Assembly: GCF_039654945.1 (NCBI RefSeq)
Contig: NW_027361754.1
Coordinates: forward strand, 27,218,001 to 27,282,000
Reading direction: 5' to 3'
Source: Dendrobates tinctorius
Lineage: Eukaryota
Length of the DNA stretch: 64,000 bases
Position 1 is the first letter of the stretch; each line of letters starts with the position of its first letter. The notes beneath the pieces are model-generated. The model did not search any database and was not told where the DNA came from. It saw only the letters and a list, made by a program, of their open reading frames with translations. The position numbers and the translations under genes were made by a program. Positions 6,400 through 52,646 of the stretch are shown here, piece by piece.

Positions 6400-9300
6400 T
6401 CAGTTTTTGGTGGAAATGCCCGTATTGATGAAATCTTGGATCTTGTCTCGGACCTTTATCTGCAGATGCTCCACTTGATCCTGAACGGTTACAGTATATT
6501 CTCCAAACTTCTTCTTCATGTCCTCGACTCTCTGTACCAGATCCTTGTTGAGGGCATCTGCATATGGGGTCATTGTGTCTTTGAACTCTACGATCTTCTG
6601 GTCCATCTTCTGGTTCATCTCGGTAAGGTAGGGATCCAATGTCTGCTTGATGTTTGTCATATCTCCATCCAGCTTGGTTCTCAGCTCATTGGCATAGGGG
6701 TAGAGTTGCTCTTTTAGTTGCCCAGTGAACTCAAACATTTTGCTTTCCATATGCTCAACGTTCTTCTTCATCTGGAAGTCCATGTTCTTGATCTTCGTTC
6801 GCAGTTCTTCCTGTACATCCTCAGCATAGGGTTCTAGGCTTTTATATAGCTCTTGGAGTTGTTGGTCAACATTATCTTTGACTTTCTCGGTGATGGGAAT
6901 TAGTTGCTTTCTGAGTTGTTCTACATTGTCGTCTATGGTAGCCTTGAGTTCTTGGGAAAATGGGGTCAATGATGACTGTATCTGGTCTGTGTTTTCTCTG
7001 ATCTTGGTCTCTAGATCCTTTGTTACACTCTTCAGCTGCTCACTGAGTGTCTCTGTGTTTTTGTCCAGCTGGGCTTTAATCTCTTCCGCATAAGGTGCAA
7101 GTTTTACCCGAAGTTCTTCTGTATTCTTAGTAAGCTGCTTCTGTACTTCCTCGGCATAAGGAATCAGCTTGTCCTTCAATTTCTCCAGCTCTTGTCTAAT
7201 TTCATCCTTCAGTCTTTCAGGATCTTGAGTTAGTTGGTCATGCATCTGCTTGACAAATGGACCAAGTTTTTGCTGCAGTTCTCCTGCATAAAGATTAATG
7301 CTCTTCAGGTTTTCGTCAATTAGACCACTGTGGAGAGCAAAAAATAATAATTATGGAACAACCTCTAAAATATAAAAAAAAATTCTTGTAATGTGCATAA
7401 AAGTATTGTGAACACTTCTGTGGTATTTTCATGGACTTTGCTTTGTCAGAATAAGTAGTTCACTGCCTTTCACTATCTGTGGCAGTGCCATAGGTATGAA
7501 TGGACCAGTGGCATGAACGTGTGGCCATAAGATGAAAACAAAGAAGAAGGAAATTATGAAATAGTGAAGAAGAGGAAAGAGCTTGTAATCATGATAGACA
7601 ATGTCAATGTGTAATGAAGGAATGCGGGAGGAGGAAGAGAATGCAAAGCAAAAAAGCAGTAAAGTTTGGAAAACAGAATGAACAGAAGTGGCCCAGGATG
7701 GGGGACATTATACATGGAAGGAACTCAGGATGGAAGACATTATACAAGGATGGAGCCCAGGATGGGGGACATTATACATGGATGGAGCTCAAGCTTGGGG
7801 TTAATATGCCAGAAGCGGGCCTAGGATGGGGGGCATTATACAAGGAAGAAGCCCAGGATGGGGGGCTCTAGACATGGAAGGAGATCAGACTTGGAGTTAT
7901 TATACCAGAAGGGGACCCAGGATGGGGGACATTAAATAAGGAAGGAGCTCAGGATGGGGGACATTATACAAGGAAGGAGCCCAGGATGGGGGATATTATA
8001 CATGGAAAGAACTCAGATTTGGGGTTATTATAGCAGAAGGGGGCCCTGGATGGGGGACATTAAATAAGGAAATAGCCCAGGATGGGGGACATTATACAAG
8101 GAAGGAGCCCAGGATGAGGGACATTATACAAGAAAGGATCTCAGGCTTGGGGTTATTATACCAGAAGGAGGCCCAGGATGGGGGGACATTAAACAAGGAA
8201 ATAGCCCAGGATGAGGGACATTATGCAAGGAAGGAGCCAAGGATGGAGGACATTATACATGGAAGGAACTCAGGCTTGGGGTTGTTATGCCAGAAGGGGC
8301 CCCAGGATGGGGAACATTATACAAGGAAGGAGCCCAAGATGGAGGTCATTATACAAGAATTGGGCTCAGGCTTTGGGCCATTATACCAGAAGGGGGCCCA
8401 TGATGGGGGATTTTATACCAAAATGAGGTACAGCATGGGGGGTCATTTTACCAGAATGAGGTCCAGAATGGGGGACATTATACCAGGATGGGTGATATTG
8501 TTAAAGAAAGGTGTCAGGATGGGGGACAATATTACAGTAACGGGCCCAAGATGGAGAACATTATACCAGGAAGAGGCCCATGATAGGGGACATTGTAAGA
8601 GGAAGAGGCCCAGGATGGGGGTCATCATACTAAAATGATTTCAAAGATGGGGGTCATTATAAAGGAAGGGGCCGATGATAGGGGCCATTATACCAAGATG
8701 GGTGTCACTATTACAGAAATTAGCCAGGATAGGGGATATTATACTAGTAAGGGGTCCATAATGGGCAAGATTATACCAGGATGGGGTACAATATACAGGG
8801 AGGGAGTCCAGGATGGGGGACATTATACAAGGAAGGAGCTCAGGATGGGGGACATTATACAAGGAAGGAGCCCAGGATGGGGGACATTATACATTGAAGG
8901 AACTCAGACTTGGGTTTTTTTTACCAGAATGTTGCCCAGGATGGGGACATTAAACAAGGAAGGAGCCCAAGATGGGTGACATTAAACACGGAAGGAGCCC
9001 GGGATGGGGGACATCATACAAGGAAGGAGACCAGGATGTTTGACAGTATACAAGGAAGAAGCCCAGGATGGGGGATATTATACATGGAAAGAGCTCAGGT
9101 TTGGCATTATTATACCATAATGGGGCCCAGGAAGGAGCCCAAGATTGGTGACATTAAATAAGGAAGGAGCTCAGGATGTTGGACATCAAACAAGGAAGAA
9201 ACCAAGGATGGGGGACATTATATAAGGAAGGAGCTCAGGATGGGGGACATTATACAAGGAAGGAGCTCAGGATGGGGGACATTATACAAGGAAGAAGCTC

Positions 9301-11813
9301 AAGATGGGGGATTTTATGCAAGGAAGAAGCCCAGGATGGTGGTGTTTATACAAGGAAGGGGGCCTATGATGGAGGTTATTATACCAGAATGAGGTCCAGC
9401 ATGGGGGGTCATTTTACCAGAATTAGGTCCAGAATGGAGGTCATTATACCAGGATGGGTGACATTGTTAAAGAAAGGTGTCATGATGGGGGACATTATTA
9501 CATTAACAGGCCCAAGATGGGGGACATTATACCAAGAAGAGGCCCATGATAGGGGTCATTATAACAGGAAGAAACTCAGGATGGGGGTCATCATACCAGA
9601 AATGTTTCAAGGATGGGGGTCATTATACAGGAAGGGGCCCATGATAGGGGACAGTATACCAAGATGGGTGTCACTGTTACAGAAATTGGCAAGGATAGGG
9701 GATATTATACTAGGAAGGGGGCCATAATGAGTAAGATTTTACCAGGATGGGGGACATTATACCAGAATGGGTGACATTGTTATGGAAAAGAACAAGGAAG
9801 GAGGATATTATTACAGTAAGGGTCCTAGTTTGGGGCACATTATACGAGGAAGGGGCCAAGAATAGTGGACATTATAACAGGAAGAGTCCCAGAATTGGCG
9901 TCATTATACCAGAATGAGATCCAGGATGGGTTACATTGTTACTGAAAAGAGCCAGGATGGGGGACATTATTACAGAAAGAGGCCCAGGAAGGGGGACATT
10001 ATTACAGAAAGGAGCCAAAATAGGGGACATTATTACAGAAAGTGGCCCTGGATGGGAGACATTATTACATGAATGGGACAGGACGGGGGGCATTATTACA
10101 GGAAGGGACAGAACGGGGATATTATTACAGAAAGGGGCAGGGCGGGGATATTATTCCAGGAAGGTGCCAAGATGGGGACACTATTATATGTATGTCTGTA
10201 TAGGATCTAAAATGCTGCAAACGCCATTACATCTGAACAACATGGAGATGGGATACAGGTCCAAATTTTGCACAGGGGCCAATGGGACTCCAATTACGCC
10301 ACTGATCCTTTCTATGATATTTTTATGCATATATTCAATTTTAAAGCATAGAGACACCCTTGGTTCCTTTCTCATTCAGCCACTCTGTAACTGTCTACAA
10401 CTTTCTGATAACAACAATAGAATAGTAATAAAACCAGTACTACATCAGCAATCACATCAGTGCATTCAGTCTGCGGTGACTGCCGTCTGTGCATATTTTG
10501 GACACCTACTTTAGCTGTCTGCTGATGTCAGATTGCTGTATCTGCTCCACTTTGTCTTTGGTGTTGCTGGACAGCTGGGTGAAGTAATTCCAGAAAGCAT
10601 CACTTATCTCGTCAGTGCTGATCTCGGCTTGAGATCCTAGGGCAGAAAAACAGATAGTAGAAAGTCACATACTATTCATCATACAAATAGAATAATATTG
10701 TATAGAGAATAACCCTCACTTTCATTTTTGTCATAAATAAATAATACAGATGACAATAAGCAGCTTCGTAATATATCTTATTAGAAAAATCTGCTTCTTT
10801 TTCCTCCAGGACTGATCTTTCACTCTCAAAATTCTCAATTCACAGGTAAAATGTGTCTTTAGTGACTACAAACCTTCCCACTACTGAGATAGGAGATGAC
10901 AGTTGGTGCTTATAAAGTTCTATGGAGAACTGTATTAGTCATTTCAGTAGAATGTCTGCGTCGACCTTTAGCTCCACCTTCTCCTTAGAATTTTAAAAGC
11001 ACCAACTGTCTTCACTGTAATGGGAACATATGTCTTCCTTAAATACAGATTTTATAGATTTTACCCCTGAATTAAGAGTGAAAGCTCAGTCCGGAAGGAG
11101 AAAGAAACAGATTTCTCTAATAAGATGTATTACAAAGTTGCTTATTTTCATCTCTACTATTGATTTGTGAAATATTAAAATCACAGTTACTCTTCAATGA
11201 TTGTTGATAGGTTATAGTTCAGGAGTAGTTATTGGTGGGGTTCAGGGTCTACAGACCCCTGGAAACAAAGAGGAAAAATGGATGAGCTTATATTCAAGTG
11301 AGAGCAAAGTGGCATATGGAGCCATAAACTTTTTATTAAAGAGGTTCACCAGGCTTAAGATATCAATATCAGATCAGTGGGGGGGGATTCTCCACCCAAT
11401 GCCCCCCATTGAACAGCTGTTTTCAGCTACATGTGGTGGTCTCCTGATGTGAGTACTAAAAAAGGGGCTGTAGCCTGTAACATATTGAAAATGTAGATAT
11501 CCTTTTATTTATCATATGAAAAAATACATATATGGAAGTATGAATACATTGTATCACTGGAAGTATATCATGATATATTCACCCATCAGTCTTTAGTTAT
11601 GGAGGTTGCAGAGGTCGCAACCCAGGGTCTGGTGACTTAGATGTTTAAATGACCCTATATCACATAAGAAGAGAATATTGTGGCACATGGTATCTGGTAT
11701 TTCCTCTTAGAATTTGGTACCAGAGTCCTACACTCAGATACTATTCACCTAGACATTTACTGACCTGTGATTGCGCACACAACTAGCGCCAGACCTAGGA
11801 CTTTCAGCAGCAT
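6400..11813 (-). CDS. apoa4: Apolipoprotein A-IV-like, copy 1; complement(join(6400..7327,10510..10636,11765..11813)), 367 aa
   Basis: All introns are GT-AG (phases 1 and 2). Signal peptide MLLKVLGLALVVCAIT-GSQA. The 127-bp exon reads EISTDEISDAFWNYFTQLSSNTKDKVEQIQQSDISRQLN, resembling human [39 protein letters not shown]. The 928-bp last exon consists of Pro-punctuated 22-mer amphipathic repeats. Good Kozak context (ACCACCATG), TGA stop at 6400-6402, AATAAA at 6039-6044 on the minus strand. Confidence 0.93.
7690..10190. repeat. G-rich minisatellite (~31-32 bp unit, AGGAAGGAGCCCAGGATGGGGGACATTATACA) in the last intron of apoa4 copy 1
   Basis: Dozens of degenerate tandem copies. These explain the repetitive ORFs at 7614-10514. 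Confidence 0.92.
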
Positions 11814-16051: not shown

Positions 16052-16870
16052 TGCTCAAAAAAATAAAGGGAACTCTCAAATAACACATCCTAGATCTAAA
16101 TGAATGAAATATTCTCATTGAATACTTTGTTCTGTACAAAGCTGAATGTGCTGTCAACATAGTCACACAAAAATCATCAATGGAAATCAAATTTTTGAAC
16201 CAATGGAGGCCTGGATTTGGAGAGACCCCCAAAATGAAAGTGGAAACAAGTCAAAATGAAAATAAAAACAATACAAAATTAAAGTGAAAACAAGTCAAAA
16301 TGATGCACAGTATTGTGTGTGGCCTCCATGTGGCTGTATGACCTCCCTACATAGCCTGGGCATGCTCCTGATGCGGTTGCGGATGTTCTCCTGAGGGATC
16401 TCCTCCCAGACCTGGACTAAAGTATCCGTCAACTCCTGGACAGTCTATGGTGCAACGTGACGTTGGTGGATGGAGCGAGACATGCTGTCCCAGATGTGCT
16501 CAATCGGATTCAGGTCTGGGGAACAGGCAGGCCAGTCCATAGCTTCAATGCCTTCATCTTGCAGGAACTGCTGACACACTCCAGCCACATGAGGTCTGGT
16601 ATTGTCCTGCATTAGGAGGAACCCAGGGCCAACCGCACCAGCATATGGTCTCTCAAGGGATCTGAAGATCTCATCTCGGGACCTAATGGCAGTCAGGCTA
16701 CCTCTGGCGAGCACATGGAGGGCTGTGTGGCCCTCCAAAGAAATGCCACCCCACACCATTACTGACCCACTGCCAAACCGGTCATGCTGAAGGATATTGC
16801 AGGCAGCTGATCGCTCTCCACGGCGTCTCCAGGCTGTCACGTCTGTCACATGTGCTGAGTATGAACCTGA
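16049..16870 (-). mobile_element. Tc1/mariner transposon remnant (3' half of DD34E transposase)
   Basis: Motifs GSVMVWGGI, LMQDNTRPH and WPACSPDLNPIEHIW. Terminus CACTGCTCAAAAAAATAAAGGGAAC follows TA. Confidence 0.9.
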
Positions 16871-21666: not shown

Positions 21667-24600
21667 TGTAGCATCCGCGGCAGTGCCTGGTCGCGTGTCC
21701 TCGTCGGCAGCACCAGCTGCCACCGCCCCCATCAGCGTCCTCGCCACAGCGCGCGCTCTTACCCTGCCTCTTGCTCTGCTACTTCTCTGCGCCCTCTCCT
21801 TAGGCCGCAGGCTTGAACAATATCACGGTTAAGAATCGATACCCGCTCCCGCTGATCCTGGAACTATTCGACCGGCTGAGAGGGGCTCGGATCTTCACGA
21901 AGCTGGATCTGCGGGGAGCCTATAATTTGATCCGGATCCGCGCAGGGGATGAGTGGAAGACGGCCTTCAATACCCGTGACGGTCATTATGAGTATTTAGT
22001 CATGCCGTTTGGTCTCTGCAATGCTCCAGCCGTGTTCCAGGAGTTCGTTAACGAGGTATTTCGGGATCTATTATACTCGTGCGTAGTGGTGTACCTAGAT
22101 GATATTCTTATCTTTTCACCCGACCTATCCTCTCATCGGAAAAGTGTACGCATGGTCCTGCACCGTCTCCGAGAGAATCACCTCTACGCCAAAATCGAAA
22201 AGTGTCTCTTCGAACAAACCTCGCTACCCTTCTTGGGGTATATAATCACTGACTCCGGCCTAAGGATGGATCCCGAGAAACTCTCTGCGGTGCTCAAGTG
22301 GCCCCGCCCTGTCGGTATAAAGGCCATCCAGCGTTTCCTCGGGTTCGCAAATTACTACCGACAGTTCGTACCACATTTTTCCACGGTGACCAAACCCATA
22401 GCGGCCCTGACCCGTAAAGGAACTAAACCAAACAGCTGGCCCCCCGAGGCTGAGGACGCCTTTCTGGCGCTGAAACGCGCCTTTGCCTCAGCACCAGTCT
22501 TGCATCGGCCGGTAGCCAGTAGGCCTTTTGTTGTAGAAGTGGACGCCTCTTCCACCGGAGCTGGGGCAGTTCTCTCCCAGCCGGGCTCCTCGGGTCAACT
22601 GGTTCCCTGCGGGTTCTTCTCCAGGTCCTTCTCGCCTGCGGAGAACAATTACTCCATTGGAGACAGGGAATTGCTGGCCATTAAGATGGCCCTAGAAGAA
22701 TGGCGGTATTTGCTCGAGGGGGCGGTGCATCCCTTTTCTATCTTCACGGACCATAAAAATTTGGCCTATTTACAGTCCGCTCAGAGGCTCAATTTCAGAC
22801 AGGCCAGATGGGCCTTGTATTTTTCGCGGTTTGATTTCAAGCTTCACTTCCGGCCCAGTGATAAGAACATCAAGGCGGATGCACTCTCCAGGTCCTTACA
22901 GTCGCCAGAGGAGGACGAGGGTCCATCTTATATTATCAAGCCTGCCAAAGTGATCACTGTGGCTCCTGTGAACTTTTCTACTCCTCCACCAGGCAAGACC
23001 TTTCGTTCCTCGGAATAAGCGTCTGGAGGTGCTGCGCTGGGGGCATTCTTCCAAGGTCGCTGGGCACGTGGGGACCAAGAAGACCCTCTTACTTCTCTCC
23101 CGTTATTACTGGTGGGCCACCCTCCGCCAAGACGTTATGGATTATGTTGCCTCCTGCACAACCTGTGCTCAGAACAAGGTCCCAAGGACCCTTCCCTCCG
23201 GTCTTCTCCACCCATTGCCCGTTCCGGAGGTCCCGTGGCAGCAAATTGCTATGGATTTCGTAACTGACTTGCCTCTGTCAGCTGGTTGCACCACCATCTT
23301 AGTCGTAGCGGACCGGTTCTCCAAGATGGCTCATTTTGTCCCCCTGGCCGGTTTGCCGTCAGCTCCGAAGTTGGCCGAGATCTTCATCCACCAGATCTTC
23401 AGGTTACATGGCCTCCCTCTACGGATTGTGTCGGACCGTGGGGTCCAATTTACGTCTCGCTTTTGGAGGGCCCTCTGTCGGCTTATGGGTACATCCATCG
23501 ACTTCTCCTCTGCTTATCATCCACAGACCAACGGGCAAGTGGAACGGATAAATCAGGGCCTGACCACCTACCTGCGTCACTTTGCCAACGCTCATCAGGA
23601 CAACTGGGTCTCACTTCTACCTTGGGCAGAATTTGCCCACAACAACCATCCCAGTGAGTCGACCACCAAATCTCCGTTCTTTGTGGTCTCTGGTCGCAAT
23701 CCGGGTGTTCCGCTGCCCTTTGCCGTGTCATCTGGAGTTCCCGCAGCGGATGCTCTCGCCATGGAATTTTCTGAGATTTGGAAGGAGACCAAAGACGCTC
23801 TCGTGAAGGCCAATGCCCGAATCAAGAAACACGCAGACAAGAGATGGAGGGACCTTCCCCTGTACCATCCTGGCGACAAGGTATGGCTCTCGACCAAGCA
23901 CATCCGCCTGAAAGTTCCTTCCTATAAGTTAAGTCCTCGTTACATCGGTCCCTTCGTGGTACTAAAACGCATCAATGACGTGGCTTATAAATTGAGATTG
24001 CCGGCTTCACTCCGAGTTGCCAACGCCTTTCATGTCTCGCTCCTGAAACCTGTAGTTCTGAATCGGTTCCAACCAGCCTCCATTACCCCTCCTTCACCTA
24101 TTGGGTCTGATGACATCTTTGAAATAAGGGACATTTTAGCCATGAAAAGGGTCAGGGGGAGGTCCCTTTTTCTTATTGATTGGAAGGGGTTTGGCCCTGA
24201 GGAGAGGTCTTGGGAGACTCGAGAAAATATCAACGCTCCCCTAATACTAAAAAGATTTCTAGCCAATCTCAAAAAGGGGGGATGTAAAGGGGGGGTACTG
24301 TAGCATCCGCGGCAGTGCCTGGTCGCGTGTCCTCATTGGCAGCACCAGCTGCCACCGCCCCCCATCAGCGTCCTCGCCACAGCGCGTGCTCTTACCCTGC
24401 CTCTTGCTCTAGTACTTCTCTGCGCCCTCTCCTTAGGCCGCGGGCGCGCGCCAGCATTCCTTCTTCTGCCGGCGGTGGGCGGCGCTGAGGGCTGGGCGTA
24501 CCTCCCACTTCCGGACCCTAAGGTATTTCAGGCGTCCTCACTGTAGAGAGGACGCCTGAGGATTGTGTGATACTCCACGCTCTGTTCTGGCCCCACTGTT

Positions 24601-30260: not shown

Positions 30261-33200
30261 CTAATTTTCGTTGGAAACTCCCTTGTTGATGAAATCTTGG
30301 ATCTTGTCTCGGACATCTATCTCCAGATACTCCACTTGATCCTGTATAGTCACGGTGTATTCTCCTAGCTTCTGTTTCATGTCCTCCACTCTTTGTACAA
30401 GGGCTTTGTTGAGGTCATCAACAAAAGGGGTCATTGTGTCTTTGAACTCTACAACCTTCTGATCCATCTTCTGGTTCATCTCGATCAGGTAGGGCTCCAA
30501 CATCTGCTTGACGTTTGTCATATCTCCATTCAGCTTGCTCCTCAGCTCATTGGCATAGGGGTAGAGTTGCTCTCTCAGCTGCCCGGTGAACTCCAACATT
30601 TTGTTCTCCATTTGCTCAACATTCTTCCTCATCTGAAACTCCATGTTCTGAATCTGCTTGCGCAGCTCATCTTGCACGTCTTCAGCATAGGGTGTTAGGC
30701 TTTTATATAGTTCTTGGAGTTGTTGGTCAATATTTTCTTTCACTTTTCCAGTGATGGGCTTCAGTTGCTTTCTCAGCTGTTCCACATTGTCGTCTATCGT
30801 AGCCTTGAGCTCTTGAGAATATGGGGTCAGGGAATCCTGAACACGGTCAGCATTTTCTCTGATCTTGGCCTCCAGATCTTTCGTTACAGACTTTATCTGC
30901 TCACTTACGATCTGAGTGTTTTTATCCAGTTGTGTTCGTAGCTGTTCTGCATATGGTGCCAGTTTTATCTGAAGCTCCTCTACATTTCTGCTTAGTTGCT
31001 TGTGCACCTCATCTGCGTAATGAGACAACTTGACCTTGAGCCTTTCCAGTTCCTGTCTTATTTGCGCCCTCAATTTTTCAGAATCTTGAGTTAGTTGCTC
31101 ATGTATTTGCTTTGCAAAGGGAATGATTTGTTGCTGAAGTTCCCCGGCGTAAAGATTGACACTTTTCAGGTTTTCTTCAATTAGAACACTGGCAAGAAAG
31201 AAAAGGATTTAATTACTACAAAAACAGTCAACATTAGTAGTGATTTCAAGTTTTTTACCATAAGGAGAGGACCTCAGCCCAATCATTTCCCAATGGCTAA
31301 CATGTATTCCCAGACACACATTCCTCTAGTAATAATAAACAATTGCCAGGGATTTCTGAACCTAGACCAATGGTTGATCACCAGATCTTCTTCTATTGTT
31401 AAACAGGTGTTTTTCAAGGGACAACATTTATAAGGGGGTTGTCTAAGAAAAAAAAAACGTTAAAAATGTTTAAAATTGAAATGCTTGCTACATACGGTAT
31501 TTATATATCTTTTAATGTCCCATTATCTACACCAGTCAAGGGCCTCAGAAACTTTACTTCTTCATGGGGTTCAACAACTTCTTATAATAAATAAACCAGA
31601 AACCTTCTCCATCACGGCTGATGAATAGATTGAGAAGACGGCTGAATTAGCAACTGAAATGAAAGCCAGCCACCCCAATTCTTAGACGCAACAAGCCAAC
31701 ACAGAAGACTCTCTCCTGTTTCAAACCCAACGTAGAAGTGGAGCTGTCGAGACCCAAGAGCATTGCCAAGGACAGGACAATGGTGGAACTTGGATAATAA
31801 AAAATAATAGAAAAAGTTGCATATAGTGGGATGTCAAACGCATCTATAGATCTTTATTCTTCTAGTTGGTCAACTTCTTTAATGTTGTTCCTTATTCTCT
31901 AGTAGTCTAAATTCATAAGGAATAGACAAGCTCCGACACTGCTCACTTACTTCAGCTGTTTGGTGATGTCCGATTGCTGGATTTTCCCCACTTTATCCTT
32001 TGTATCAGTGGTTAGTTGGGTGAAGTAATCCCAGAAAGCTTCGGTTATCTGGTCAGAGCTGATATCAGCTTGGGATCCTGAAAAAAAAAACAACAAAGTT
32101 AGAAACTGAGGAGATCGAAAGATAAAAATAAATTCTTATTTTGTCTTTTAGTGTATACTGTTACAACAAACATAACTTAATAGGGTTATTCCCATATCAG
32201 CATGCTATCAACCATCCAACGAATAGGCAATTACTTGTCGATTGCTTGGACCCTTTACATATCCCACAAATAGGACTCCGAAGTGCATTACTATTTTACT
32301 CATTCTATACGTAACTGCAAGACATAGATAAGTGCTGCACTAATCTTCCTCTGGCGGTCTATAAGACAATAAATGGTGCAGTGGCGTACATGCTCAACCG
32401 TTACTCTAGTCATAAAGCTTCAATCTTGGAATCAAGAAGGATTCCAAAGGTGGGAGCTCTAGTGATCAAAAAGTTATCAAGATTATTCAGTTCTAGACAT
32501 GAGATTTTTTTAACGTGAAGAACAAAAAAATTCTACAATTCATACACCAGCCACTACTCTCCCTCCTCGATGATCTGCACAACATGAGCAACAGGATCCC
32601 TCTTCAGATATTTGGCTAGTGTGTGTCACCAATAAACTGAACAGCATGAGAAACATGATCTGTCTACAGCAATGTTCCCCAACTCTAGTTCTCAAGAACC
32701 ACCAGCAGATCATGTTTTCAGGACCTCCTTAAGGGGGCTTTACACATAGCGATATCGCTAGCGATATCGCTAAAGCGTCACCGATTTTGTGACGCAGCAG
32801 CGATATCGCTAGCGATATCGCTACATGTGATACTTACCTCAGACCACATCCATTTCTCGTCGTCGCCTTCCTGCTGGCGCCGATGAGCGAGCTATGGACG
32901 CGAGTGGAAGACGGCGGTCATCGCTTCGTCTGAAAGGTAAGTATGACCGCCGAGCATCGCTACATCGCTGTGAGATCTGCCTGTTTGGCAGCTCACTAGC
33001 GACCATTTAGCGATGCACCAGCGATCCTGACCGGGTCGTATCGTGTTCGGGATCGCTGGTGCACCGCTAAATGTAAAGGGGCCTTTGGTATTGCCCAGGT
33101 GATGGAATTATCACCTGTACAATACTGTGGAAATCCTGATAGCATGACCTGTGGGTGACTCATGAGGGTGGGAGTTGGGGAAACCTGCTCTACAGATATC

Positions 33201-37341: not shown

Positions 37342-37399
37342 TAATTAATGTGAAATGTAATTTTTATGTACTGTAATGTCATGTGTCTGTCAGGTACAT

Positions 37400-39539
37400 A
37401 GGCTTAGGGCATAGATTCTCTATGGGGTTAAAGTCAGGCGAGTTTGCTGGCCGATCAAGCACAGTGATACTGTTGTTTGTAAACCAGGTATTGGTACTTT
37501 TGGCAATGTGAAAACGTGCCAAGTCCAGCTGGATAATCAAATTTCCATCTCCAAAAAGTTTGTTGGCAGAGGGAAGCATAAAGTGCTCTAAAATTTCCTG
37601 GTAGACATCTGCATTGACTTTGGTCTTGATAAAACACAGTGGACCTACACCAGCAGATGACATAGCTCCCCAAATCATCATTGATTGCAGAAACTTGACA
37701 CTAGACCTCAAACAGCTTGCATTATTGTGTGCCTCATCACTCTTCCTCTAGACTCTGCGATCTTGATTCACAAATGAAATACAAAATTTACTTTCATCTG
37801 AAAACAACACCTTAGACCACTGAGCAACAGTCCAGTTCTTTTTCTTCTTGACCCAGGTAAGATGCTTCTGAAGTTGTCTATTGGTCATGAGTGGCTTGAC
37901 ACAAGGAATGTGACACTTGTACCTCATGTCCTGGATACATCTGTGTGTCGTGGCTCTTGAAGCAATGACTCCAGCAACAGTCCACTCTTTGTGAATCTCC
38001 CCCAATTTTTTGAATGACCTTTTCTTTACAGTCCTTTCAAGGCTGTGGTTATCCCACTTACTTGTGCACCTTTTTCTACCACACTTTTTCCTTCCACTCA
38101 ACTTTCCATTAATATGCTTGGATACAGCACTCTGTGAACAGCCATCTTCTTTATCAATGACCTTTTTTGGCTTACCCTCTTTGGGGAATGTGTCAATGAC
38201 TGCTTTCTGGACATCTGTTAAGTCAGGAGTCTTCCTCATGATTGTGGAGCCTACTGAAACAGACTTAATGTCATGAACTGGGGGTGTGAGGTTGTCCCCC
38301 AGTTATCAGAGACTTATATACCACTTTCCAGCTACGGTTATGAACTTGCAGCTCTCTGTTGCCCCATACCCTCAGATCAGTCAGGGAACTACACCTAGGA
38401 TAAGTAGTCGCCAGAAAGGCTGCCTTGCCATGTACTGGCTATTGGGCACTCTGCAGTGAGGGCGGTATGTATATCCCCAGTCTCAGGCAGGAAATACATA
38501 CATAAAACCTCCATTTCATCACTGCCAGAGTCTCCTCAATACCCCAGAACACTTTGCTGCCACCAGCTCCTCGTTCTATTTTGAAATCAATATCGGGTCA
38601 GGGGCCAACGAACACGGTAGGGTAATTTTTAAAAAAAGAGATAAACGGGCACCACCCACACAATCAATTTAAGTGGGATCACCTTGTGCATATGCATAAG
38701 TTTATATAGAAGCACATGGAGAAAAAAAGTATATGCACACAAATAGGGATCACCACACAATAATGTGATCAAAAAATATCAGTTTTATCTTTTATCTTTC
38801 ATTTAAGACCAAAGCATCTTATATCTAGGTACTACTGGGAAGCATATACCCTTTTCTCGATTTCTGGTGGGCTCCGAAGCTTCAAAACCCACCTGTGGAT
38901 AGCTCTAACCATGCAGTTTCCAAAAATATAAGTTTCCTGCCTCTATGAATATTTTGTGTTATTATAGTTGATCCTGAATATACAAAGAACCATGTGCTTT
39001 TAAACAAAGCCTGAGTTCGCTGGTCATAAGACACATTACCAAGGGAGGGGGAAAGAGTGGAATCGAATTACCCACAGGCAGAGAGACTGCAGCTATATGC
39101 CATTCCAACAGGGGGGGAAAATGGAGGGGGTTGGACGCTGCAGCAACGAGCCTGTACATAAGCTCAGTGTGACACTGCACAACCTAATGGATGAGAGGCA
39201 GCGTGTCATTCAAAAACCAAGGAGCTGCAGCCGATAACCCTGTATGTGTAATCAGAACAATTAGAAATACTTCATATTTCCTGACACTAAGGGATTTTTT
39301 TAAATGCTTAGGAAGCCTTTGCAGGTGTTTTTTGTTAATTATTCCAATTTACTGAGCTAATGACTTTTGGGTTTTCATTGGCTGTAAGCCATAATCATCA
39401 TCATTGACAGAAGTAAACTCTTGAAATAGATCACTCTGTTTCTAATGACTCTATAGAATTTATGAGTTTTACTTTTTGTATTGAAGAACTGTTAGAAATT
39501 AACTTTTTGATGATATTCTAATTTTGCGAGAAGCACTTG
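37400..39539 (-). mobile_element. Tc1-like transposon with degenerate transposase (37400-38239), interrupted by ~1 kb of other repeats (38269-~39260)
   Basis: HTH N-terminus, WSKVLFSDESKF, MIWGAMS and NSPDFNPIENL. Tc1-type terminus CAAGTGCTTCTCGCAAAATTAGAATATC on the minus strand at 39539, next to TA. Confidence 0.85.
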
Positions 39540-45075: not shown

Positions 45076-45659
45076 TATTGTCAGGGACATTAGAGTGCAC
45101 GGACTCTAAAAGAAGCCAGGAGCCTGTTCGATCCACAGGTGAAGTGTCGCGATGAAGGAGGACAACAGTGGTCAGAAAGAGGGCAAGTGAGACGACGAAT
45201 CGTTACACATATATATGCAACATATGGAAAGATAAGCCCCTTCCTTATGCCGTGTGGACCGCTTAAGCATGGGATCCAATGCTTTATATTAGACAGCCAG
45301 TTATTTGCAATGCTTCAGATGATATTTACGTAAAAAACATTTAAAATAGCAAAACATTGTCGTGCAAATTACCATCTTCTTGTGATTTCTTACTTGTTTA
45401 TTTTTTTTCCTTTTTTGCAAAATGTTCCCAAAACCTAGAAATCTCTTTGTCTAAAACTTGCAGAAATCTGCAAAATATGGTAAATGTCGGCATCTATACA
45501 GGTATTGGCTCTGAGATTATTTCCTATCAGTTGAGCCTTTCCTATCTCTTCCACACCAGAGTCAGCAGTTCCAGCTGCACCTTTCTGATCTGGCTCTGCA
45601 ACCTTCACCCCTTCTCTGCACACCTCTCCTCTTCCTCCCTCCCTTCAGCGGACCCAGCC

Positions 45660-45727
45660 TATATAACAGTGGCACCTGTATATTGGGCCAATACACTGGA
45701 CTGAGCTTGAAGTGCAGCATTGAACTG
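45660..45727 (+). promoter_or_regulatory. apoc3-like TATA box and short non-coding exon 1
   Basis: TATATAA at 45660-45666. Donor CTG|GTGAGA at 45727/45728. Matching polypyrimidine-CAG acceptor at 47513/47514, 21 nt upstream of the ATG. Confidence 0.65.
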
Positions 45728-45857
45728 GTGAGATCCCCTTTAAATCTGTGCCAATAGTGTTCCTATAAGTAGAATTATATTAATAGACTCGTTGCCTGGG
45801 CATAGTAACCCACTATGGTTAGTTATAACAAATTATAATGATTATGTTGCACATAAA

Positions 45858-46383
45858 AACCGTGTATCTAATCCTATCCTGTGTGATACTGACTGCTGAG
45901 CCGTGTATCTAATACTATTATCTGTGATTTTGTCTGCTGAGCCGTGTATCTTATACTATTCTGTGTGATACTGTGTGCTGAGCTGCGTATCTAATCCTAT
46001 CCTGTGTGATACTGTCTGCTGAGCTGAGTATCTAATCCTATCCTGTGTGATACTGACTGCTGAGCCGTGTATCTAATCCTATATCCTGTGTGATAATGTC
46101 TGCTGAGCCATGTATCTAATCCTATTCTGTGTGATACTGTCTGCTGAGCCGTGTATCTAATCCTATCCTGTGTGATACTGACTGCTGAGCCGTGTATCTA
46201 ATCCTATCCTGTGTGATACTGCCTGCTGAGCCGTGTATCTAATCCTATCCTGTGTGATACTGACTGCTGAGCCGTGTATCTAATCCTATCCTGTGTGATA
46301 CTGACTGCTGAGCCGTGTATCTAATCCTACCCTGTGTGATACTGACTGCTGAGCCGTGTATCTAATCCTATCCTGTGTGATAT
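45858..46383. repeat. 41-bp tandem repeat (CTGCTGAGCCGTGTATCTAATCCTATCCTGTGTGATACTGA) in apoc3-like intron 1
   Basis: About 13 near-identical copies. Confidence 0.93.
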
Positions 46384-47109
46384 TGGACTCCCCCTGCAGT
46401 CTGTGTCAGAGTGTGGTCTGTGTTGGCACGGTAATAAATTGTGTTATTTCCAGCTTTACAGAAGGACGATAACACCATAGAAATGATAAGAATAATAGGC
46501 CTCAGTTACCACAACTGTCTACAAAGAAAACTGTTGCTGATAGCAACCAATCACAGCTCATTTTTCATCTTTTAAACATCTCTGGGACAGCGTGGCGAGT
46601 TTTGAGTGGCGACTTTTGTGTTTCGTCTTTTATGTGGCGAGGTTGGTGTATGTGTGGTGAAATGTGTGCTGAGGGTGGTATATGTGTTGGAGCACGTGGT
46701 AGTGTGTGGTGAATTTTGTGTGTGTGTTCATATCCCCGTGTGTGGTGAGTATCCCATGTCAGAGCCCCACCTTAGCAACTGTACGGTATATACTCTTTGG
46801 CGCCATCGCTCTCATTCTTTAAGTCCCCCTTGTTCACATCTGGCAGCTGTCAATTTGCCTCCAACACTTTTCCTTTCACTTTTTCCCCATTATGTAGATA
46901 GGGGCAAAATTGTTTGGTGAACTGGAACGCACGGGATTAAAATTTTGCCTCACAACATAGCCTATGACGCTCTCGGGGTCCAGACGTGTGACTGTGCAAC
47001 ATTTTGTATATATCAAGTACTGAGCACACTCATGGGGTTGTGATGTGAAAAATTATATTTAATACCTACAGTAGTCACTAGTAACAAATAGACCTTCCTC
47101 AGTGTCCTA

Positions 47110-47150
47110 GTACACTGATGAAGGTCTAGCAAGACCGAAATGTTTGGTAC
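47110..47150 (+). ncRNA. Degenerate minimal hammerhead-like motif
   Basis: GTACA-CTGATGA-A-GGTCT(AGCA)AGACC-GAAATGTT-TGGTAC. Helix III looks like AACGTT after CpG decay. Confidence 0.45.
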
Positions 47151-47534
47151 CAGTCAGTAGTGCCGTAGATAAGCCCTAGGGACCTTCAGGGCCCACTCGG
47201 GACTAATACATGGCAGATTTGCTTGTACAAAATTTGCTATCGCAGTAGCAGAAGGATGGATGAGATTTAAGAAAGTTTGCAAAATCTCATTCAAACTTTG
47301 CAGAGAAAATTTTAATTGCTGTGGATTTAAATTGCTGATTTCATCTTTTGCGACAAAATCTGTACGATTTAGTGCTGATTTTGCCGCTCTGGATTTTGAT
47401 GCAAATTTTTAATTTTCCCATAGGTTAAAAATAGTTAAATTGACGTTCTCCACTTATTTAAATGTTATATTTTTAGAATTCATTTTATGACATTTTTCTT
47501 TTTTTTTTCACAGGTCTGCCATAATAACCTGAAC

Positions 47535-50488
47535 ATGAAGCTCTTGGTGATCTCTGCTCTGCTTGTCCTTGCAGTCTGTGCAGGTGAGAACTTCTTCCTC
47601 TATATTGCAACTTACAGAAAAGATTTGAGGGTAACTCAACTTTTACATTTTCTGATAAGTAAAAGCCAATAAAAAGTATTGTTGATCCATGTGGATATCT
47701 GTGAAGCGCATAGAATGCAGATTACCACCTCAGATGGTCCGGACAACCTCCAAGCATAAGCTGGGTGTTTTGGGTGATGTGTTTGGATCAAAGAACCCTG
47801 ACCGACACCGATCAAAATTACTTTACAGTGGTAACAACCTATGAAGAAATCATGTAAAAGTTCAGTTGGCTGACAATTTAGGTCACTGCCAGCACTATGC
47901 TGCTCCATGTTTTTGCCTCCACATGCATCCCCTAATAACCCTTTGCTGACTTCCTCTTGTCAGGCTGTGACTCATGAACTCTCATCTGACTTTCCTAATG
48001 TTGTACACAAAGCTTTGCAATCCAGAGGTTGATTAACATCTGAGTACTGGAGGGAAGAACATTGGGGCTGACTTAGTAGTAATGTTGGGGAGATAAATTT
48101 TCTATATATTTCTGATCTTTCTCCTAAGACTGGACCCGCTTACTTGATAAATCTATTCCCTAAAATAATACCACTACTACTTTTGGTGCTATTTTTTCAC
48201 CATAGATTTCTATGGGCAGCCTAAGATGTACGTGTTAAATCGCAACTGCGGAATTGCGCTATTTTTGCACTAAAATTTTCTGCACACCCAGAAATATAAA
48301 AACATGCAACAAGCACACCATAAACAGTACAGATGGCTATTGCATTTTTTGGTGTGGACACTCCCAGAAAACGTACAGAAAAGCATTTTCGCTCCGGGAA
48401 TGCATCCTTAGTATAGCAAAGCGATGGAATAATTGACTGTGGATGAGCAGAACTACTTGATCAGATATTTAAAGGGGTTGTTCTACTACATACTGTACAT
48501 TCAACATCTATTGACAGCATAGGTGAGAAACGTATGACCGTTGGTGGTCCGATCAGTGATCCTGAGAACAAGGGTCCAAAGTCACCAATTGTGAATAGAG
48601 CGATGGAATGAGAATGGAGTGATGGTCACGCATGGGCACTACTACTCTTTTCACACAAGAAACTTTGGTGTCCCGGAACTCTGGGTGGGTGAAGGTCCCA
48701 TTGGTCAAACCCCTAATGATCATACATTTATCCCCTATTCCGTGGGTAGGTTTTCAATATATTAAGACGGCCAACCCCCATATAAAGGGGTTGGCTAGGA
48801 TTAGAAAACACATGACTACCTTCTTCCAAAAACACAGAATGCAGCTTGTGTGACCATATATTGCCACCCAGCCCCAGCCATTTCTACAGGACTTGTAATA
48901 TCAGACACCTATAGAAGGATGTTGCAGTTTCTCTAGAACGTCAACCATGTTTCTCTTGTCTTGTACAATTCATTTGAAAAACCTCTTGATGTGTCATAAG
49001 TCATGTGGAGCGTGTCTTCAGTGGGAATCTCGGTACTCAGAATCCCATCGATCAAAACTTGACTTATTCCTATGACATGTGAAAAGTTTTAAAAAAAAAT
49101 GAAAGTTTCTCCAACTATGTCAATGGCTACCAGCCAAGGAGTTGTGCATTTTAAAGGAAGAGAGGTACCAACTGGAAACTTTTTGCCTTTTTACCAATGT
49201 TATTTCTTAACCCATGTAACCCCGAATGAACTTCTTACCATAACTCTGCTGCTTTAACTCTTTTTTTTTGTTCTGATCCCAGTCTCTGCAGAGGAGGAAA
49301 CTTTCCTGTCATCGACAATCAACTATGTGCAGGACTTGGCCAGTGAAGTTGCCACCAAAACAACAGACGCTTTGAACCAAGTAAAGGAAATGCCCCTGGC
49401 ACAGCAGGCAATGTAAAGATATTTTGGATTTATGACAGACATGACAGCACACACGCCTCTTGCTTATGTCTCTCCCCTTTGCCTTCCCCTTGAATGTGGG
49501 TTTTAATTTTGGGGCACATGGTATAAAAAAGTTAGGGGAAGCATTGCCTTGTTGGAGGCTGCCAATTCTTCGGGGAGCCTCAAGGACTTCCAGAAGAGCT
49601 GGGAAGTATGAGTTAGAACCTACGAGGAATCACAGTGTTCCTTTAGTATTTAGGCCACCAAAGCAGACCAATTTCAACTGTAAATGAATAGAAACATATG
49701 ACCCAGGCTTGTCACCTATAGCCTTTATCCAAACAATATAATCAAAATGCTTCCTGTTTCATAGAGGTGGGAATAAGTTGGACTTTTGGTAGGGTGGTTA
49801 AGGGTGATGTGGCATTAGTGCAGGGCTACCAAGGCTGGGCGCAATATATTTCCTTATTCAGTCATGTACCATGTATCCCATTTTACCCAAACTGTGAGCA
49901 CTTTGTTAGACTTGGAGCTTGGTCGTCATAAGCGTTGGGAGCATGCCAACTCAAATTCACCGTCACCTGATATTGAAAATGGCAGGAGGCATCAAGGGGT
50001 TTTCCAGGATTTTGGTATTGATGGCCCAGCCTTAGGATAGGTCATCAACATCAGATCAGTAGGGATCATGATGATCGGAAGTGTACGGAGTTGGAACATT
50101 ACAGCTCCATACACTGTGTAGTTATCATACCCGGGTATTGCAGCATATCCCCTTTTCTTGCGTCCACCCTATTTCATAGCATAGCAGGCAGTTGATATCG
50201 AAATCTTGAAAAACACCATTATTGGATGGGGATAGGAAAACATGAAATGGGGGCACTAATGGAAATTTTCTAGTTTCAAGTTTACGTTATATCAAAGGGT
50301 GGTTTGGATCTAGAGTTGGCTAATGTTCTTCCTTCACAGACATATAAGTGTGAATTCAGCTTGACTGTTCTGTCCTTTATTCCTTTAGTGGCATGTATGA
50401 TTCTGGATCTGAGTACGTCAGCTCTTTGTACTCCTCAATTTTCGACAAGGCAATCGAGAGATGGGAACAGCTGACCAAATCCTTCTAA
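47535..50488 (+). CDS. apoc3: Apolipoprotein C-III-like; join(47535..47583,49283..49412,50389..50488), 92 aa
   Basis: Spliced product: MKLLVISALLVLAVCAVSAEEETFLSSTINYVQDLASEVATKTTDALNQVKEMPLAQQAIGMYDSGSEYVSSLYSSIFDKAIERWEQLTKSF. It resembles human ApoC-III (..[47 protein letters not shown]). The phase-2 intron falls right after AQQA, as in APOC3. Orientation is divergent from apoa4, as in the mammalian cluster. AATAAA at 50742-50747. Confidence 0.85.
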
Positions 50489-51620
50489 TGTGACCCAACG
50501 AGCAATCTCTACAAGCCGAGTATTTCCTGGCAATCAACTATATGTACAGCGTATCTTGGAGAACAGGGAATGTACCATTCTGGCCACTACATATGGCGTA
50601 ACATGGAAAATGTTATCTTTCTTAATAAGTCCAGGTTCAGAATTGTCCGCCCATAAATCGCACTGTCTACCATGCCGCTGTTTCTCCGATTTTCTCTGCA
50701 ATTAGTTTTATTTGATGTTTTTTTAAAGGATGTCTTTTATAAATAAAGTCACACTGACGGCAACATCTATGGCATTCATTTATTTAGCTTAAAGGGGTCA
50801 TCTAGCTAGAAAAAATATGTAGATGGGTTTAAAATATCTAGCTTACTAATATACTTTTAATTATCAAAAGTGAATTGATATGAAGATATCCGCACTGGTT
50901 CTGGGTCCCCGCAGCTCCTCTTCCAGCCAACAGAGATTACCAGTTCTGTGTGATGGAGGTCGGCAAAATGGCTAGTTTTAGTAGAAAACCCAACCCCATG
51001 TTCTGTCTATGCATGCAGGCCTGTGACAAAAAAATAAACAAAAGTAACTGTATAGGTATTCTCTAAAAATATTTAGACATACTTTTTTCATCTGGACAAC
51101 CACTTTAGATGTCAATGTGCAAACAGCGACTTTTTTCCACAGTCCTTTCTATCTATTGTCTGCTGTAAGCACGGACACAAAATTCTCCATCATAGTGCAC
51201 AAACGAGGAAATTAAATCTTCTGACCCCTGTAACAAAGCCCCCGCTTCATGTAGAGAGACAAAGACCCTCCCTAATTTCCCGTAGAGAGATAAAGCTCCA
51301 CCCAACTTCCTGTAAAGAGATAAAGAGTCACCCCCACTTCATGTAGAGAGATAAAGACCCACCCCCACTTTCAATAGAGCAGTGGTGGCGATCCTGTGGC
51401 AAGCATTCAGAGTCGACTCTGAGGGCACAGATGTGCTGCTGTCTCCTGTGATTTCTGCACCAGCCCTACTGTCGCCTGCAATGTCTGCACCAGCCCCAAT
51501 TTCTCCTGCGATGTGTGCACCAACCCCAATGTTTCCTGTGATGTCTGCACCATTCCCAAACTCCTCCTGCAATGTCTGCACCAGTCCCAATGCCTCCTGT
51601 GATGACCGCACCAACCCCAC

Positions 51621-52646
51621 TGTTAGGCTATGTGCACACACTGCGGATTGATCTGCGGATTTTTATCTGCAGAACCGCAGGTAAAACAACTGCGGTTTTG
51701 CCCTGCGGTTTGCCACCTGGACAATGGAATAGGTGGCAAACCGCAGCAGAATCCGCAGAAATAATCGATATGTCAATTGTTTCTGCGGATTCAAAACCGC
51801 AGCTTTTCCGCAGTTAAAAAACCACAGCAGAATGTTAATCCCATAGGATAACATGCTACTGTACACTGTCTGCAGAACTGCTGCAGCGTGTGCACATAGC
51901 CTTAGGGTTCCTGCAGTGGTTCAACAGGAATCCAGAGCCTCACATTCTGCGGTCTCCCATTATCTTTCGACTGCAGAGGAGATTGCTCAGCAATCCCGGC
52001 TTCCCAGATGCTCTGCCCAGACCTGCTCTGTGGGGCAGGCTATTGCTGCCACCTTTGGGTCAGCAATGGCAGTGCAGGTTGCTCAGCAGCAAATTGCTCC
52101 AGAGGCTAAGTCCCTCCGTCGCTCTACTGAGCATGCTCACGAGACGATCTCCCATTGGAGATCGGGAGTCACATGTCCAGGTCTTTCTCATGATCTGATT
52201 GGTCCATCTCAGGGATCTGGAAGCTTCCGGAAGGTCCCGGCTATAAAAGGTTCGCATGGCCGCTCGGCCATGCGCTAGTATAGTTTCTAGTTGCTAACTG
52301 TCTGAATGATGATGGATGCATGAACCTGTGAATGACTCATTAAGATCCCCTCCCTCTGATATTATGAGTGTGTATAGGGACTTAGCTATAGAGTCATTGC
52401 GAGCCAGCGGCAAGCTACAAGCCACTACAACATCCTCCACAGTGCTAGCGTCCGACAGTGCACCTGCTTCCGGGCATTGTCGACTAGCGGCAGTGTCTGT
52501 CGCCACACTGCAGTCTGCAGCTCCTCTTGGCGTCCACAATAGCGACACCGCACGCACGGTAGGTCTAGACGGATGCTGACCCTCTGCCTAGGGCCCAGCT
52601 CCTTGTGACCATATACCGTGCGTGCACTTCTCTGAGACCTGTGACA
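51621..52646. mobile_element. LTR-like repeat with nested Harbinger-type MITE (51626-51901, TTA TSD)
   Basis: MITE TIRs GGCTATGTGCACAC / GTGTGCACATAGCC. The host reads TGTTAGGG...TGTGACA and has CCAAT/TATA-like motifs near 52200-52250. Confidence 0.6.

What the first reader, a model, noticed from the sequence alone, without database searches (positions are those of the whole stretch)
45660..50747. Hidden ApoC-III orthologue in a probable amphibian, not recovered by the ORF track
Seen: four small exons with canonical splice sites, a TATA box and a polyA signal give an intact 92-aa secreted protein with the KTTDALNQVKEMPLAQQA motif. Established: human APOC3 has the same intron phases and sits head-to-head with APOA4. 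Inference: this is a true apoc3 orthologue, diverged enough to be missed or left unnamed. It bears on when this lipoprotein-lipase inhibitor arose. It ends at ..RWEQLTKSF and lacks the human C-terminal tail that carries the O-glycosylated Thr. A second in-frame acceptor at 49291/49292 would drop 3 residues at the signal cleavage site.
Basis: partly seen in the sequence, partly recalled or inferred. Interest (0 to 1): 0.72.

Follow-up and report, generated by a model that had tools for sequence, protein, structure and literature searches.

The report
Frog apolipoprotein C-III gene, expressed
This is a real, spliced and expressed gene for the small blood-lipid protein apolipoprotein C-III in a poison-frog-like genome, but the same gene is already annotated under that name in several other frogs and salamanders, so it is an ordinary find.

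Summary
All three GT..AG junctions and the poly(A) site appear in spliced contigs of public runs of the same species and of a relative.

The interpretation also holds. The peptide's only apolipoprotein match in Pfam is Apo-CIII (E 3e-6, whole profile, but below the curated cut-off). A frog profile finds human apoC-III as the only apolipoprotein among solved structures. The gene lies head-to-head with an apoA-IV gene. It is under purifying selection (dN/dS about 0.15).

It is not "hidden", though. NCBI already names 66-95% identical proteins "apolipoprotein C-III" in Ranitomeya, Anomaloglossus, Leptodactylus, Pyxicephalus, Mixophyes and Eleutherodactylus, and more distant ones in three salamanders.

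Three details need correcting:
- The second acceptor at 49291/49292 is unused in the contigs and not conserved.
- One transcript contig starts upstream of the TATA box, so the start site is unsettled.
- apoA-I is not within the 13 kb to the right.

The short C-terminus, without the human tail, is shared by all amphibian sequences seen. Lipase inhibition is inferred, not shown. The ApoC1/C2/C4/A2 phylogeny could not be run.

The parts
45480..45667 (+). Conserved proximal promoter block ending in the TATATAA box (45660-45666)
   Evidence: It is 91.5% identical to Ranitomeya imitator over 188 nt, against about 84-85% in the introns and 80% in the exon-1 stretch after the TATA box. Its function as a promoter is inferred. 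One transcript contig starts inside it at 45611.
45611..45727 (+). Exon 1 (non-coding 5' UTR); the 5' limit is the furthest contig end, and the true start site is unresolved
   Evidence: The X15 contig covers 45611-45726 and joins to 47514, with GT..AG ends. The same exon 1/exon 2 junction is implied by the Ranitomeya RefSeq model.
45860..46382 (.). 41-bp tandem repeat, 12.7 copies, inside intron 1
   Evidence: Tandem Repeats Finder, 91% matches. It is not part of the gene's function.
47514..47583 (+). Exon 2: 21 nt of 5' UTR, the ATG at 47535 and 16 1/3 codons of the signal peptide (phase-1 donor)
   Evidence: Sequence. The joint 47583|49283 is seen in four runs. It is 93% identical to Ranitomeya and conserved in Pyxicephalus.
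49283..49412 (+). Exon 3: end of the signal peptide (VSA) and the N-terminal amphipathic helix with the DAL..V.E...AQQA core
   Evidence: On its own it hits Pfam Apo-CIII at E 9.9e-5. It is 97% identical to Ranitomeya and 82% to Pyxicephalus, where the flanking introns do not align. Joints lie on both sides.
50389..50763 (+). Exon 4: the last 32 1/3 codons (C-terminal amphipathic helix, Trp85), stop TAA at 50486-50488, 3' UTR, AATAAA at 50742-50747 and the poly(A) site near 50763
   Evidence: Contigs cover 50389-50765 with no mismatch. An X17 contig carries 24 A after 50763. Sequence.
30261..31073 (-). Last exon of the neighbouring apoA-IV gene, divergent from apoc3
   Evidence: Pfam Apolipoprotein A1/A4/E at E 1.4e-53. 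Human apoA-IV scores E 2e-56 against apoA-I at 2e-11.
6400..7245 (-). Last exon of a second apoA-IV-like gene further upstream
   Evidence: Pfam PF01442 at E 1.5e-59.

Best explanation
This is the apoc3 gene of a dendrobatid-type frog.

Shown: it is transcribed, spliced from four exons and polyadenylated. It encodes a 92-aa precursor.

Predicted: a signal peptide (MKLLVISALLVLAVCAVSA) followed by a 73-aa mature peptide that forms two amphipathic helices (about residues 23-50 and 54-91).

Inferred from the family: the peptide is secreted by liver and gut. It sits on triglyceride-rich lipoproteins and HDL through its aromatic C-terminal helix (Tyr74 and Trp85 align with human Trp54 and Trp65). 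There it slows triglyceride lipolysis and remnant uptake, as mammalian apoC-III does.

The amphibian form ends 7 residues earlier than the human one, so it lacks the tail with the O-glycosylated Thr74.
For: - Gene model and peptide.
- Transcripts: three GT..AG joints, a full-length spliced contig with no mismatch, a poly(A) tail, and very high k-mer depth on the exons in a relative's run. Intron depth is two to three orders of magnitude lower.
- Family: Pfam Apo-CIII at E 3.1e-6 over profile positions 2-66 of 69. No ApoC-I, C-II, C-IV or A-II model matched at E up to 10. Of 10 amphibian members, 9 hit Apo-CIII and none hit another apolipoprotein family.
- Solved structures: a frog profile finds human apoC-III (2jq3, E 1e-3, frog 22-86 = human 6-66) as the only apolipoprotein at E up to 10.
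- Named orthologues: proteins 66-95% identical are called apolipoprotein C-III by NCBI.
- Synteny: an apoA-IV gene lies on the opposite strand upstream. The same arrangement holds in Ranitomeya. Pyxicephalus has an apoA-I-like last exon 8 kb downstream, convergent.
- Selection: dN/dS is 0.15 and 0.17. Coding exon sizes of 49/130/100 nt are identical in three frogs. In the distant Pyxicephalus only the three coding exons align.
- Structure: helices predicted at 23-50 and 54-91. The hydrophobic moment peaks in both halves.
Against: - The Pfam score of 27.1 bits is below the curated cut-off of 34.1.
- The amphibian profile found no amniote or fish protein at library-wide significance.
- The language-model search ranks ApoC-II clusters (0.91) almost level with ApoC-III (0.92).
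- UniRef labels two frog orthologues 'Apolipoprotein C-II'.
- The tissue of the RNA runs is unknown, and the runs are not on record as RNA.
- No functional data exist for any amphibian apoC-III in the papers searched.
- The structure model has low confidence (pLDDT 55).
Confidence: 0.92

Rival explanations
1. It is a different small exchangeable apolipoprotein, most plausibly ApoC-II, mislabelled as C-III by automatic pipelines.
For: The ESM Atlas feature search puts ApoC-II clusters at 0.91, next to ApoC-III at 0.92. UniRef names the Aquarana and Engystomops orthologues 'Apolipoprotein C-II'.
Against: The Apo-CII, ApoC-I, APOC4 and ApoA-II Pfam models do not match at E up to 10, while Apo-CIII matches at 3e-6. 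Among solved structures only apoC-III is found. The gene sits beside apoA-IV. From general knowledge, APOC2 lies instead in the APOE/C1/C4/C2 cluster.
Confidence: 0.04
2. It is an amphibian-specific gene that arose independently at this spot, for example from an apoA-I/A-IV fragment, and only resembles ApoC-III.
For: The link to amniote ApoC-III is weak in sequence: below the Pfam cut-off, and E 1e-3 to the human protein. No amniote protein was recovered in the large searches.
Against: The match runs the whole length of the Apo-CIII profile and keeps the DAL..V.E...AQQA core, Gly66 = human Gly46 and Trp85 = human Trp65. The position and orientation next to apoA-IV are the same. Intron 3 falls in the codon aligned with human Arg40, which is where I recall the human intron to be; I did not test this.
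Confidence: 0.03
3. It is a decaying or non-functional copy that happens to keep an open frame.
For: None beyond the low Pfam score.
Against: dN/dS is 0.15-0.17 over both short and long distances. The frame is intact in 12 or more amphibians. Spliced polyadenylated transcripts are abundant. The window holds a single copy.
Confidence: 0.01

Closest known systems
Human/mammalian apolipoprotein C-III (APOC3; Pfam PF05778; NMR structure 2jq3)
   Same: Both are small secreted peptides with two amphipathic helical halves. The conserved core is D-A-L..V.E...A-Q-Q-A. Gly66 aligns with Gly46, Tyr74 with Trp54 and Trp85 with Trp65. Both genes have four exons, with introns in the 5' UTR, in the signal peptide and after the AQQA motif. 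Both lie head-to-head with APOA4.
   Different: Roughly a quarter of the residues are identical over the aligned 61. The frog form has a 4-residue insertion in the N-terminal helix. Its C-terminus is 7 residues shorter, without the Thr74 O-glycosylation tail. Its Pfam score is below the curated cut-off. The amphibian sequences have a nearly invariant Thr four residues after the Trp. Whether that Thr is glycosylated is unknown.
NCBI-annotated 'apolipoprotein C-III' of Ranitomeya imitator and other frogs, and of Lissotriton, Pleurodeles and Ambystoma
   Same: The frog proteins are 66-95% identical, nearly all are 92 aa long (Mixophyes 94), and they share the VSA|E signal junction and the ...KSF end. 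The exon sizes and neighbours are the same.
   Different: The Ranitomeya model is 161 aa because it starts at an upstream ATG and reads through the 5' UTR. That extension is not conserved as protein in the window: 69% amino-acid identity against about 90% nucleotide identity. The window's own protein is not in the protein collection.
Apolipoprotein C-II
   Same: It has a similar size, a signal peptide and amphipathic helices. It is a near neighbour by language-model features.
   Different: There is no match to the Apo-CII profile. Its genomic neighbourhood is different. From general knowledge it has the opposite effect on lipoprotein lipase.

Membership tests
Apolipoprotein C-III (APOC3 orthologue group; Pfam PF05778) | Specific sequence similarity to ApoC-III over the whole mature peptide, and to no other small apolipoprotein family | tested here: met
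   Pfam Apo-CIII matches at E 3.1e-6 and 27.1 bits over profile 2-66/69, with no other apolipoprotein model at E up to 10. Of 10 amphibian members, 9 hit it. Human apoC-III is the only apolipoprotein hit in the PDB. Caveat: the score is below Pfam's curated cut-off of 34.1 bits.
Apolipoprotein C-III (APOC3 orthologue group; Pfam PF05778) | Lies head-to-head (divergent) with APOA4 | tested here: met
   The apoA-IV last exon at 30261-31073 is on the - strand upstream of the + strand gene. The arrangement is the same in Ranitomeya.
Apolipoprotein C-III (APOC3 orthologue group; Pfam PF05778) | Lies tail-to-tail (convergent) with APOA1 | tested here: inconclusive
   There is no apoA-I-like match in the 13 kb right of the gene in the window, or in 10 kb in Ranitomeya. 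In Pyxicephalus an apoA-I-like last exon lies 8 kb downstream on the opposite strand. The frog intergenic space here is probably just larger than the window.
Apolipoprotein C-III (APOC3 orthologue group; Pfam PF05778) | Four exons: intron 1 in the 5' UTR, intron 2 in the signal peptide, intron 3 in the mature peptide at the codon matching human residue 40 | tested here: met
   The frog junctions are shown by contigs. The phases are 1 and 2. Intron 3 splits Ile60, which aligns with human Arg40. The human intron positions are recalled from the literature and were not re-derived here; human DNA was not fetched.
Apolipoprotein C-III (APOC3 orthologue group; Pfam PF05778) | Small secreted peptide of amphipathic helices | tested here: met
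   There is a hydrophobic N-terminus with a V-S-A cleavage motif. Helices are predicted at 23-50 and 54-91, at low confidence. The hydrophobic moment is 0.4-0.56 in both halves.
Apolipoprotein C-III (APOC3 orthologue group; Pfam PF05778) | Expressed in liver and intestine | tested here: inconclusive
   Abundant spliced, polyadenylated contigs occur in four runs from two studies. The tissues are coded and not known to me.
Apolipoprotein C-III (APOC3 orthologue group; Pfam PF05778) | Inhibits lipoprotein lipase and hepatic uptake of triglyceride-rich lipoproteins | not testable with these tools
   This needs the recombinant peptide and an LPL/emulsion assay, or a knock-out.
Apolipoprotein C-II (Pfam PF05355) | Match to the Apo-CII profile and a position in the APOE/C1/C4/C2 cluster | tested here: not met
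   There is no Apo-CII hit at E up to 10 for the window peptide, or at E up to 1 for 10 amphibian members. The neighbour is apoA-IV.

The most novel reading that the evidence does not exclude
Amphibian ApoC-III may be an early, tail-less state of the protein that falls below the family's curated profile cut-off. If no fish gene proves orthologous, APOC3 arose in the tetrapod stem by insertion between apoa4 and apoa1. The O-glycosylated C-terminal tail would then be a later amniote or mammalian addition, with possible differences in how the protein controls lipolysis. My searches neither found nor excluded fish or amniote links.
Probability: 0.3. Interest if true: 0.35.

Novelty: already known. 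Interest (0 to 1): 0.15.

Why it matters
It adds a transcript-verified apoc3 gene model for one more frog genome. It shows that amphibian ApoC-III scores below Pfam's curated cut-off. That fits with several orthologues being left as 'hypothetical', 'Uncharacterized' or mislabelled 'Apolipoprotein C-II' or 'Uteroglobin' in public databases, though the link is my inference. It confirms that the APOA4-APOC3 arrangement predates the split of amphibians and amniotes. It does not change what is known about the gene family, and no new mechanism is implied.

Tried and rejected
- Phylogeny with ApoC-I, C-II, C-IV and A-II: not run, because no tool supplied those sequences and I did not type them from memory. 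Profile discrimination was used instead.
I re-ran it with database proteins only. It found only amphibians plus two spurious repeat proteins: a 4320-aa Pseudovibrio Ig-repeat protein and a 510-aa repeat ORF.
- The alignment-based word search found only amphibians, so the age of the family beyond amphibians stays open.
- Exon 4 alone gives no Pfam hit.
- Exon 3 alone against the PDB gives only chance-level DDRGK1 matches.
- The structure prediction has low confidence (pLDDT 55), so no fold search was made.
- A tblastn search for apoA-I to the right of the gene found nothing.
- The alternative acceptor at 49291/49292 is rejected as incidental.
- The TATA box as the sole start determinant is questioned, because a contig reaches 45611.
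- An imperfect DR1-like element (CAACCTTCACCCC, about 45599-45611), fully conserved with Ranitomeya, recalls the HNF4 site of the mammalian APOC3 promoter. That is a recollection and was not tested.
- Paper searches found nothing on amphibian apoC-III itself.
Full report
**What is in the sequence**

The gene lies on the + strand. Reading 45400-51000 and splicing by script gives this model:
- a TATATAA box at 45660-45666;
- a non-coding exon 1 ending at 45727 (CTG|GTGAGA);
- exon 2 at 47514-47583, with the ATG at 47535 and a phase-1 donor;
- exon 3 at 49283-49412, with a phase-2 donor AAT|GTAAAG;
- exon 4 from 50389, with stop TAA at 50486-50488 and AATAAA at 50742-50747.

It includes the KTTDALNQVKEMPLAQQA stretch and the ...RWEQLTKSF end. 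The window has no N and holds only this one copy.

**Transcript evidence**

One search for runs used exon 4 plus the 3' UTR. It found four runs of one species (organism G, one study) that hold all sampled words. It also found runs of a related species (organism A) that hold about a quarter.

I laid X15, X16, X17 and X1 on 45600-50800.
- Exon 1 to exon 2: joint 45727|47514, GT..AG, seen in X15 and X16.
- Exon 2 to exon 3: joint 47583|49283, GT..AG, seen in all four runs.
- Exon 3 to exon 4: joint 49412|50389, GT..AG, seen in X15, X16 and X17. In X1 the loose end after 49412 reads the start of exon 4.
- A 694-nt X15 contig carries all four exons without a mismatch.
- An X17 contig ends in 24 A after 50763, which is 16 nt past the AATAAA.
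- Summed contig depth, a poor measure of level, is two to three orders of magnitude higher on exons than on introns. The runs therefore behave as RNA, although they are not on record as RNA.

These are contigs, so rare isoforms and exact ends cannot be judged.

Two corrections follow.
- The acceptor used is 49282|49283. The in-frame acceptor at 49291|49292 is not seen. Its AG is absent in Ranitomeya (GCG for GCA) and not conserved in Pyxicephalus. I treat it as an accident of the Ala-Glu codons.
- The X15 contig starts at 45611, upstream of the TATA box. The Ranitomeya RefSeq model also runs through the TATA region from a further upstream exon. The start site is therefore unsettled.

Other evidence favours a TATA-directed promoter. 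The 188 nt ending at the TATA box are 91.5% identical between the window and Ranitomeya. The introns are 84-85% identical, and the exon-1 stretch after the TATA box is 80%. That pattern is what a constrained proximal promoter would give.

**What the protein is**

- In Pfam the whole peptide matches Apo-CIII (PF05778) at E 3.1e-6 and 27.1 bits, over profile positions 2-66 of 69. That is below the curated cut-off of 34.1 bits. No ApoC-I, C-II, C-IV or A-II model appears at E up to 10.
- Exon 3 alone gives E 9.9e-5. Exon 4 alone gives nothing.
- Of ten amphibian relatives scanned, nine hit Apo-CIII and none hits another apolipoprotein family.
- A profile of the frog proteins searched against all solved structures finds human apoC-III (2jq3) at E 1e-3. 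It is the only apolipoprotein at E up to 10.

That alignment pairs frog 22-86 with human 6-66. It keeps the D-A-L..V.E...A-Q-Q-A core. It pairs Gly66 with Gly46, Tyr74 with Trp54 and Trp85 with Trp65.

After the alignment the frog has 6 residues and the human 13. The frog form is therefore 7 residues shorter and lacks the part that, from general knowledge, carries the O-glycosylated Thr74. All amphibian sequences end at about the same place. A Thr four residues after the Trp is nearly invariant in them. Its significance is unknown.

**Relatives and names**

The word-index search returned nine frog proteins, 66-95% identical to the window's peptide.
- Named 'apolipoprotein C-III' by NCBI: Ranitomeya imitator (95%), Anomaloglossus baeobatrachus (88%), Leptodactylus fuscus, Pyxicephalus adspersus, Mixophyes fleayi and Eleutherodactylus coqui.
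- Named 'hypothetical protein': Aquarana, Pristimantis and Engystomops. UniRef calls two of them 'Apolipoprotein C-II'.

The exhaustive profile search added three more:
- Hymenochirus boettgeri, labelled uncharacterised;
- Pelobates cultripes, whose 113-aa model appears to read on past the end of exon 3, and which UniRef labels 'Uteroglobin';
- the newt Lissotriton helveticus, named apolipoprotein C-III.

The alignment search added Pleurodeles and Ambystoma. No amniote or fish protein reached significance against these very large libraries. My searches therefore say nothing about the family's age beyond amphibians.

The 95% identity to Ranitomeya, against 88% to the aromobatid Anomaloglossus, places the window in a dendrobatid-type frog. 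So does the roughly 83% identity across non-coding DNA.

**Neighbourhood**

Upstream on the - strand are two apoA-IV-type last exons, at 30261-31073 and 6400-7245. The nearer one matches human apoA-IV at E 2e-56, against apoA-I at 2e-11. The head-to-head arrangement with apoa4 therefore holds. Ranitomeya has the same arrangement.

To the right, the 13 kb left in the window hold no apoA-I-like sequence. In Pyxicephalus an apoA-I-like last exon lies 8 kb downstream on the opposite strand. The expected convergent neighbour therefore exists in frogs but falls outside this window.

**Constraint**

The coding exon sizes (49, 130 and 100 nt) are identical in the window, Ranitomeya and Pyxicephalus. 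dN/dS is 0.15 and 0.17. Against the distant Pyxicephalus only the three coding exons align.

**How it most likely works**

Shown: transcription, splicing, polyadenylation, an intact conserved frame, and family-level similarity.

Predicted: a cleavable signal peptide (V-S-A|E). Two amphipathic helices at 23-50 and 54-91, from an AlphaFold2 model with pLDDT 55, which is usual for a lipid-free exchangeable apolipoprotein. Hydrophobic moments are up to 0.42 in the N-terminal half and 0.56 in the C-terminal half.

Inferred from mammalian apoC-III: secretion from liver and gut, binding to triglyceride-rich lipoproteins through the aromatic C-terminal helix, and restraint of lipoprotein-lipase action and remnant uptake. 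No amphibian data on this were found in the papers searched. A review of the family's evolution places APOC3 late and lists no zebrafish apoc3 among the genes it names (PMC7431520).

**Rivals**

- ApoC-II is suggested by two UniRef labels and by near-equal language-model scores. The profile searches and the synteny contradict it.
- An independent amphibian invention is made unlikely by the full-length profile match, the shared residues, the same neighbour and the same intron placement.
- A pseudogene is excluded by expression and selection.

**Verdict**

The identification as apoc3 is right, at about 0.92 confidence. The gene is already annotated under that name in close and distant amphibian relatives, so it is neither hidden nor new.

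The residual value is a transcript-checked model, the note that amphibian ApoC-III scores below Pfam's cut-off and is mislabelled in places, and the shared tail-less C-terminus.

The requested phylogeny with the other small apolipoproteins could not be run with the sequences available. It remains the main open check.

Noticed in passing
window 45860-46382: A 41-bp tandem repeat (12.7 copies, 91% matches) lies in intron 1. In all four laid runs it collects summed contig depths in the thousands, so it belongs to a dispersed, transcribed repeat family and not to this gene.
   Followed up: partly
window 46357-46906: All four runs give contigs of 376-550 nt on the - strand of this stretch of intron 1, and the contigs share the same differences from the window. 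It looks like a dispersed expressed repeat (SINE-like), not intron retention.
   Followed up: no
window 51239-51624; L001 20300-22600 and 25950-28400: 30/31-bp minisatellites lie just downstream of apoc3. In Ranitomeya the same units are expanded to kilobases, and a gene caller has turned them into an 858-aa 'protein', which is probably an artefact.
   Followed up: partly
L001 10001-16182 (Ranitomeya imitator); window 45542-45733: The NCBI Ranitomeya apoC-III model is 161 aa. Its first 69 residues come from a far-upstream exon (the model starts about 380 nt from the neighbouring gene call, 4551-9619 on the - strand, whose last exon is apoA-IV-like) plus translation of the 5' UTR through the TATA box. 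In the window that frame is only 69% identical as protein, so the extension is probably not real protein.
   Followed up: partly
proteins P0005, P0009, P0010: Public labels for these frog orthologues look wrong. UniRef calls the Aquarana and Engystomops proteins 'Apolipoprotein C-II' and the Pelobates protein 'Uteroglobin'. The 113-aa Pelobates model diverges after the end of exon 3, as if it reads into intron 3.
   Followed up: partly
window 45480-45667: The block upstream of the TATA box is 91.5% identical to Ranitomeya, well above the intron background. It contains an imperfect DR1-like element (about 45599-45611) that is identical in both frogs, at a distance from the TATA box that recalls the HNF4 site of the mammalian APOC3 promoter. 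That resemblance is a recollection and was not tested.
   Followed up: partly
window 21813-24303 (+): Two long ORFs (401 and 424 aa) have the look of reverse-transcriptase/RNase H and integrase (Ty3/gypsy-type retrotransposon pol). They lie between the two apoA-IV genes. I did not scan them.
   Followed up: no
window 37379-38239 (-) and 16445-16849 (-): ORFs here resemble Tc1/mariner-type transposase pieces, judged by eye only. One lies between apoa4 and apoc3.
   Followed up: no
protein P0011 (Pseudovibrio, 4320 aa): A bacterial Ig-repeat protein matches the frog ApoC-III profile at E 1.5e-14 through 32 short repeated stretches (profile 35-66). This is a spurious repeat-driven hit and a caution for profile searches with short helical peptides.
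   Followed up: partly
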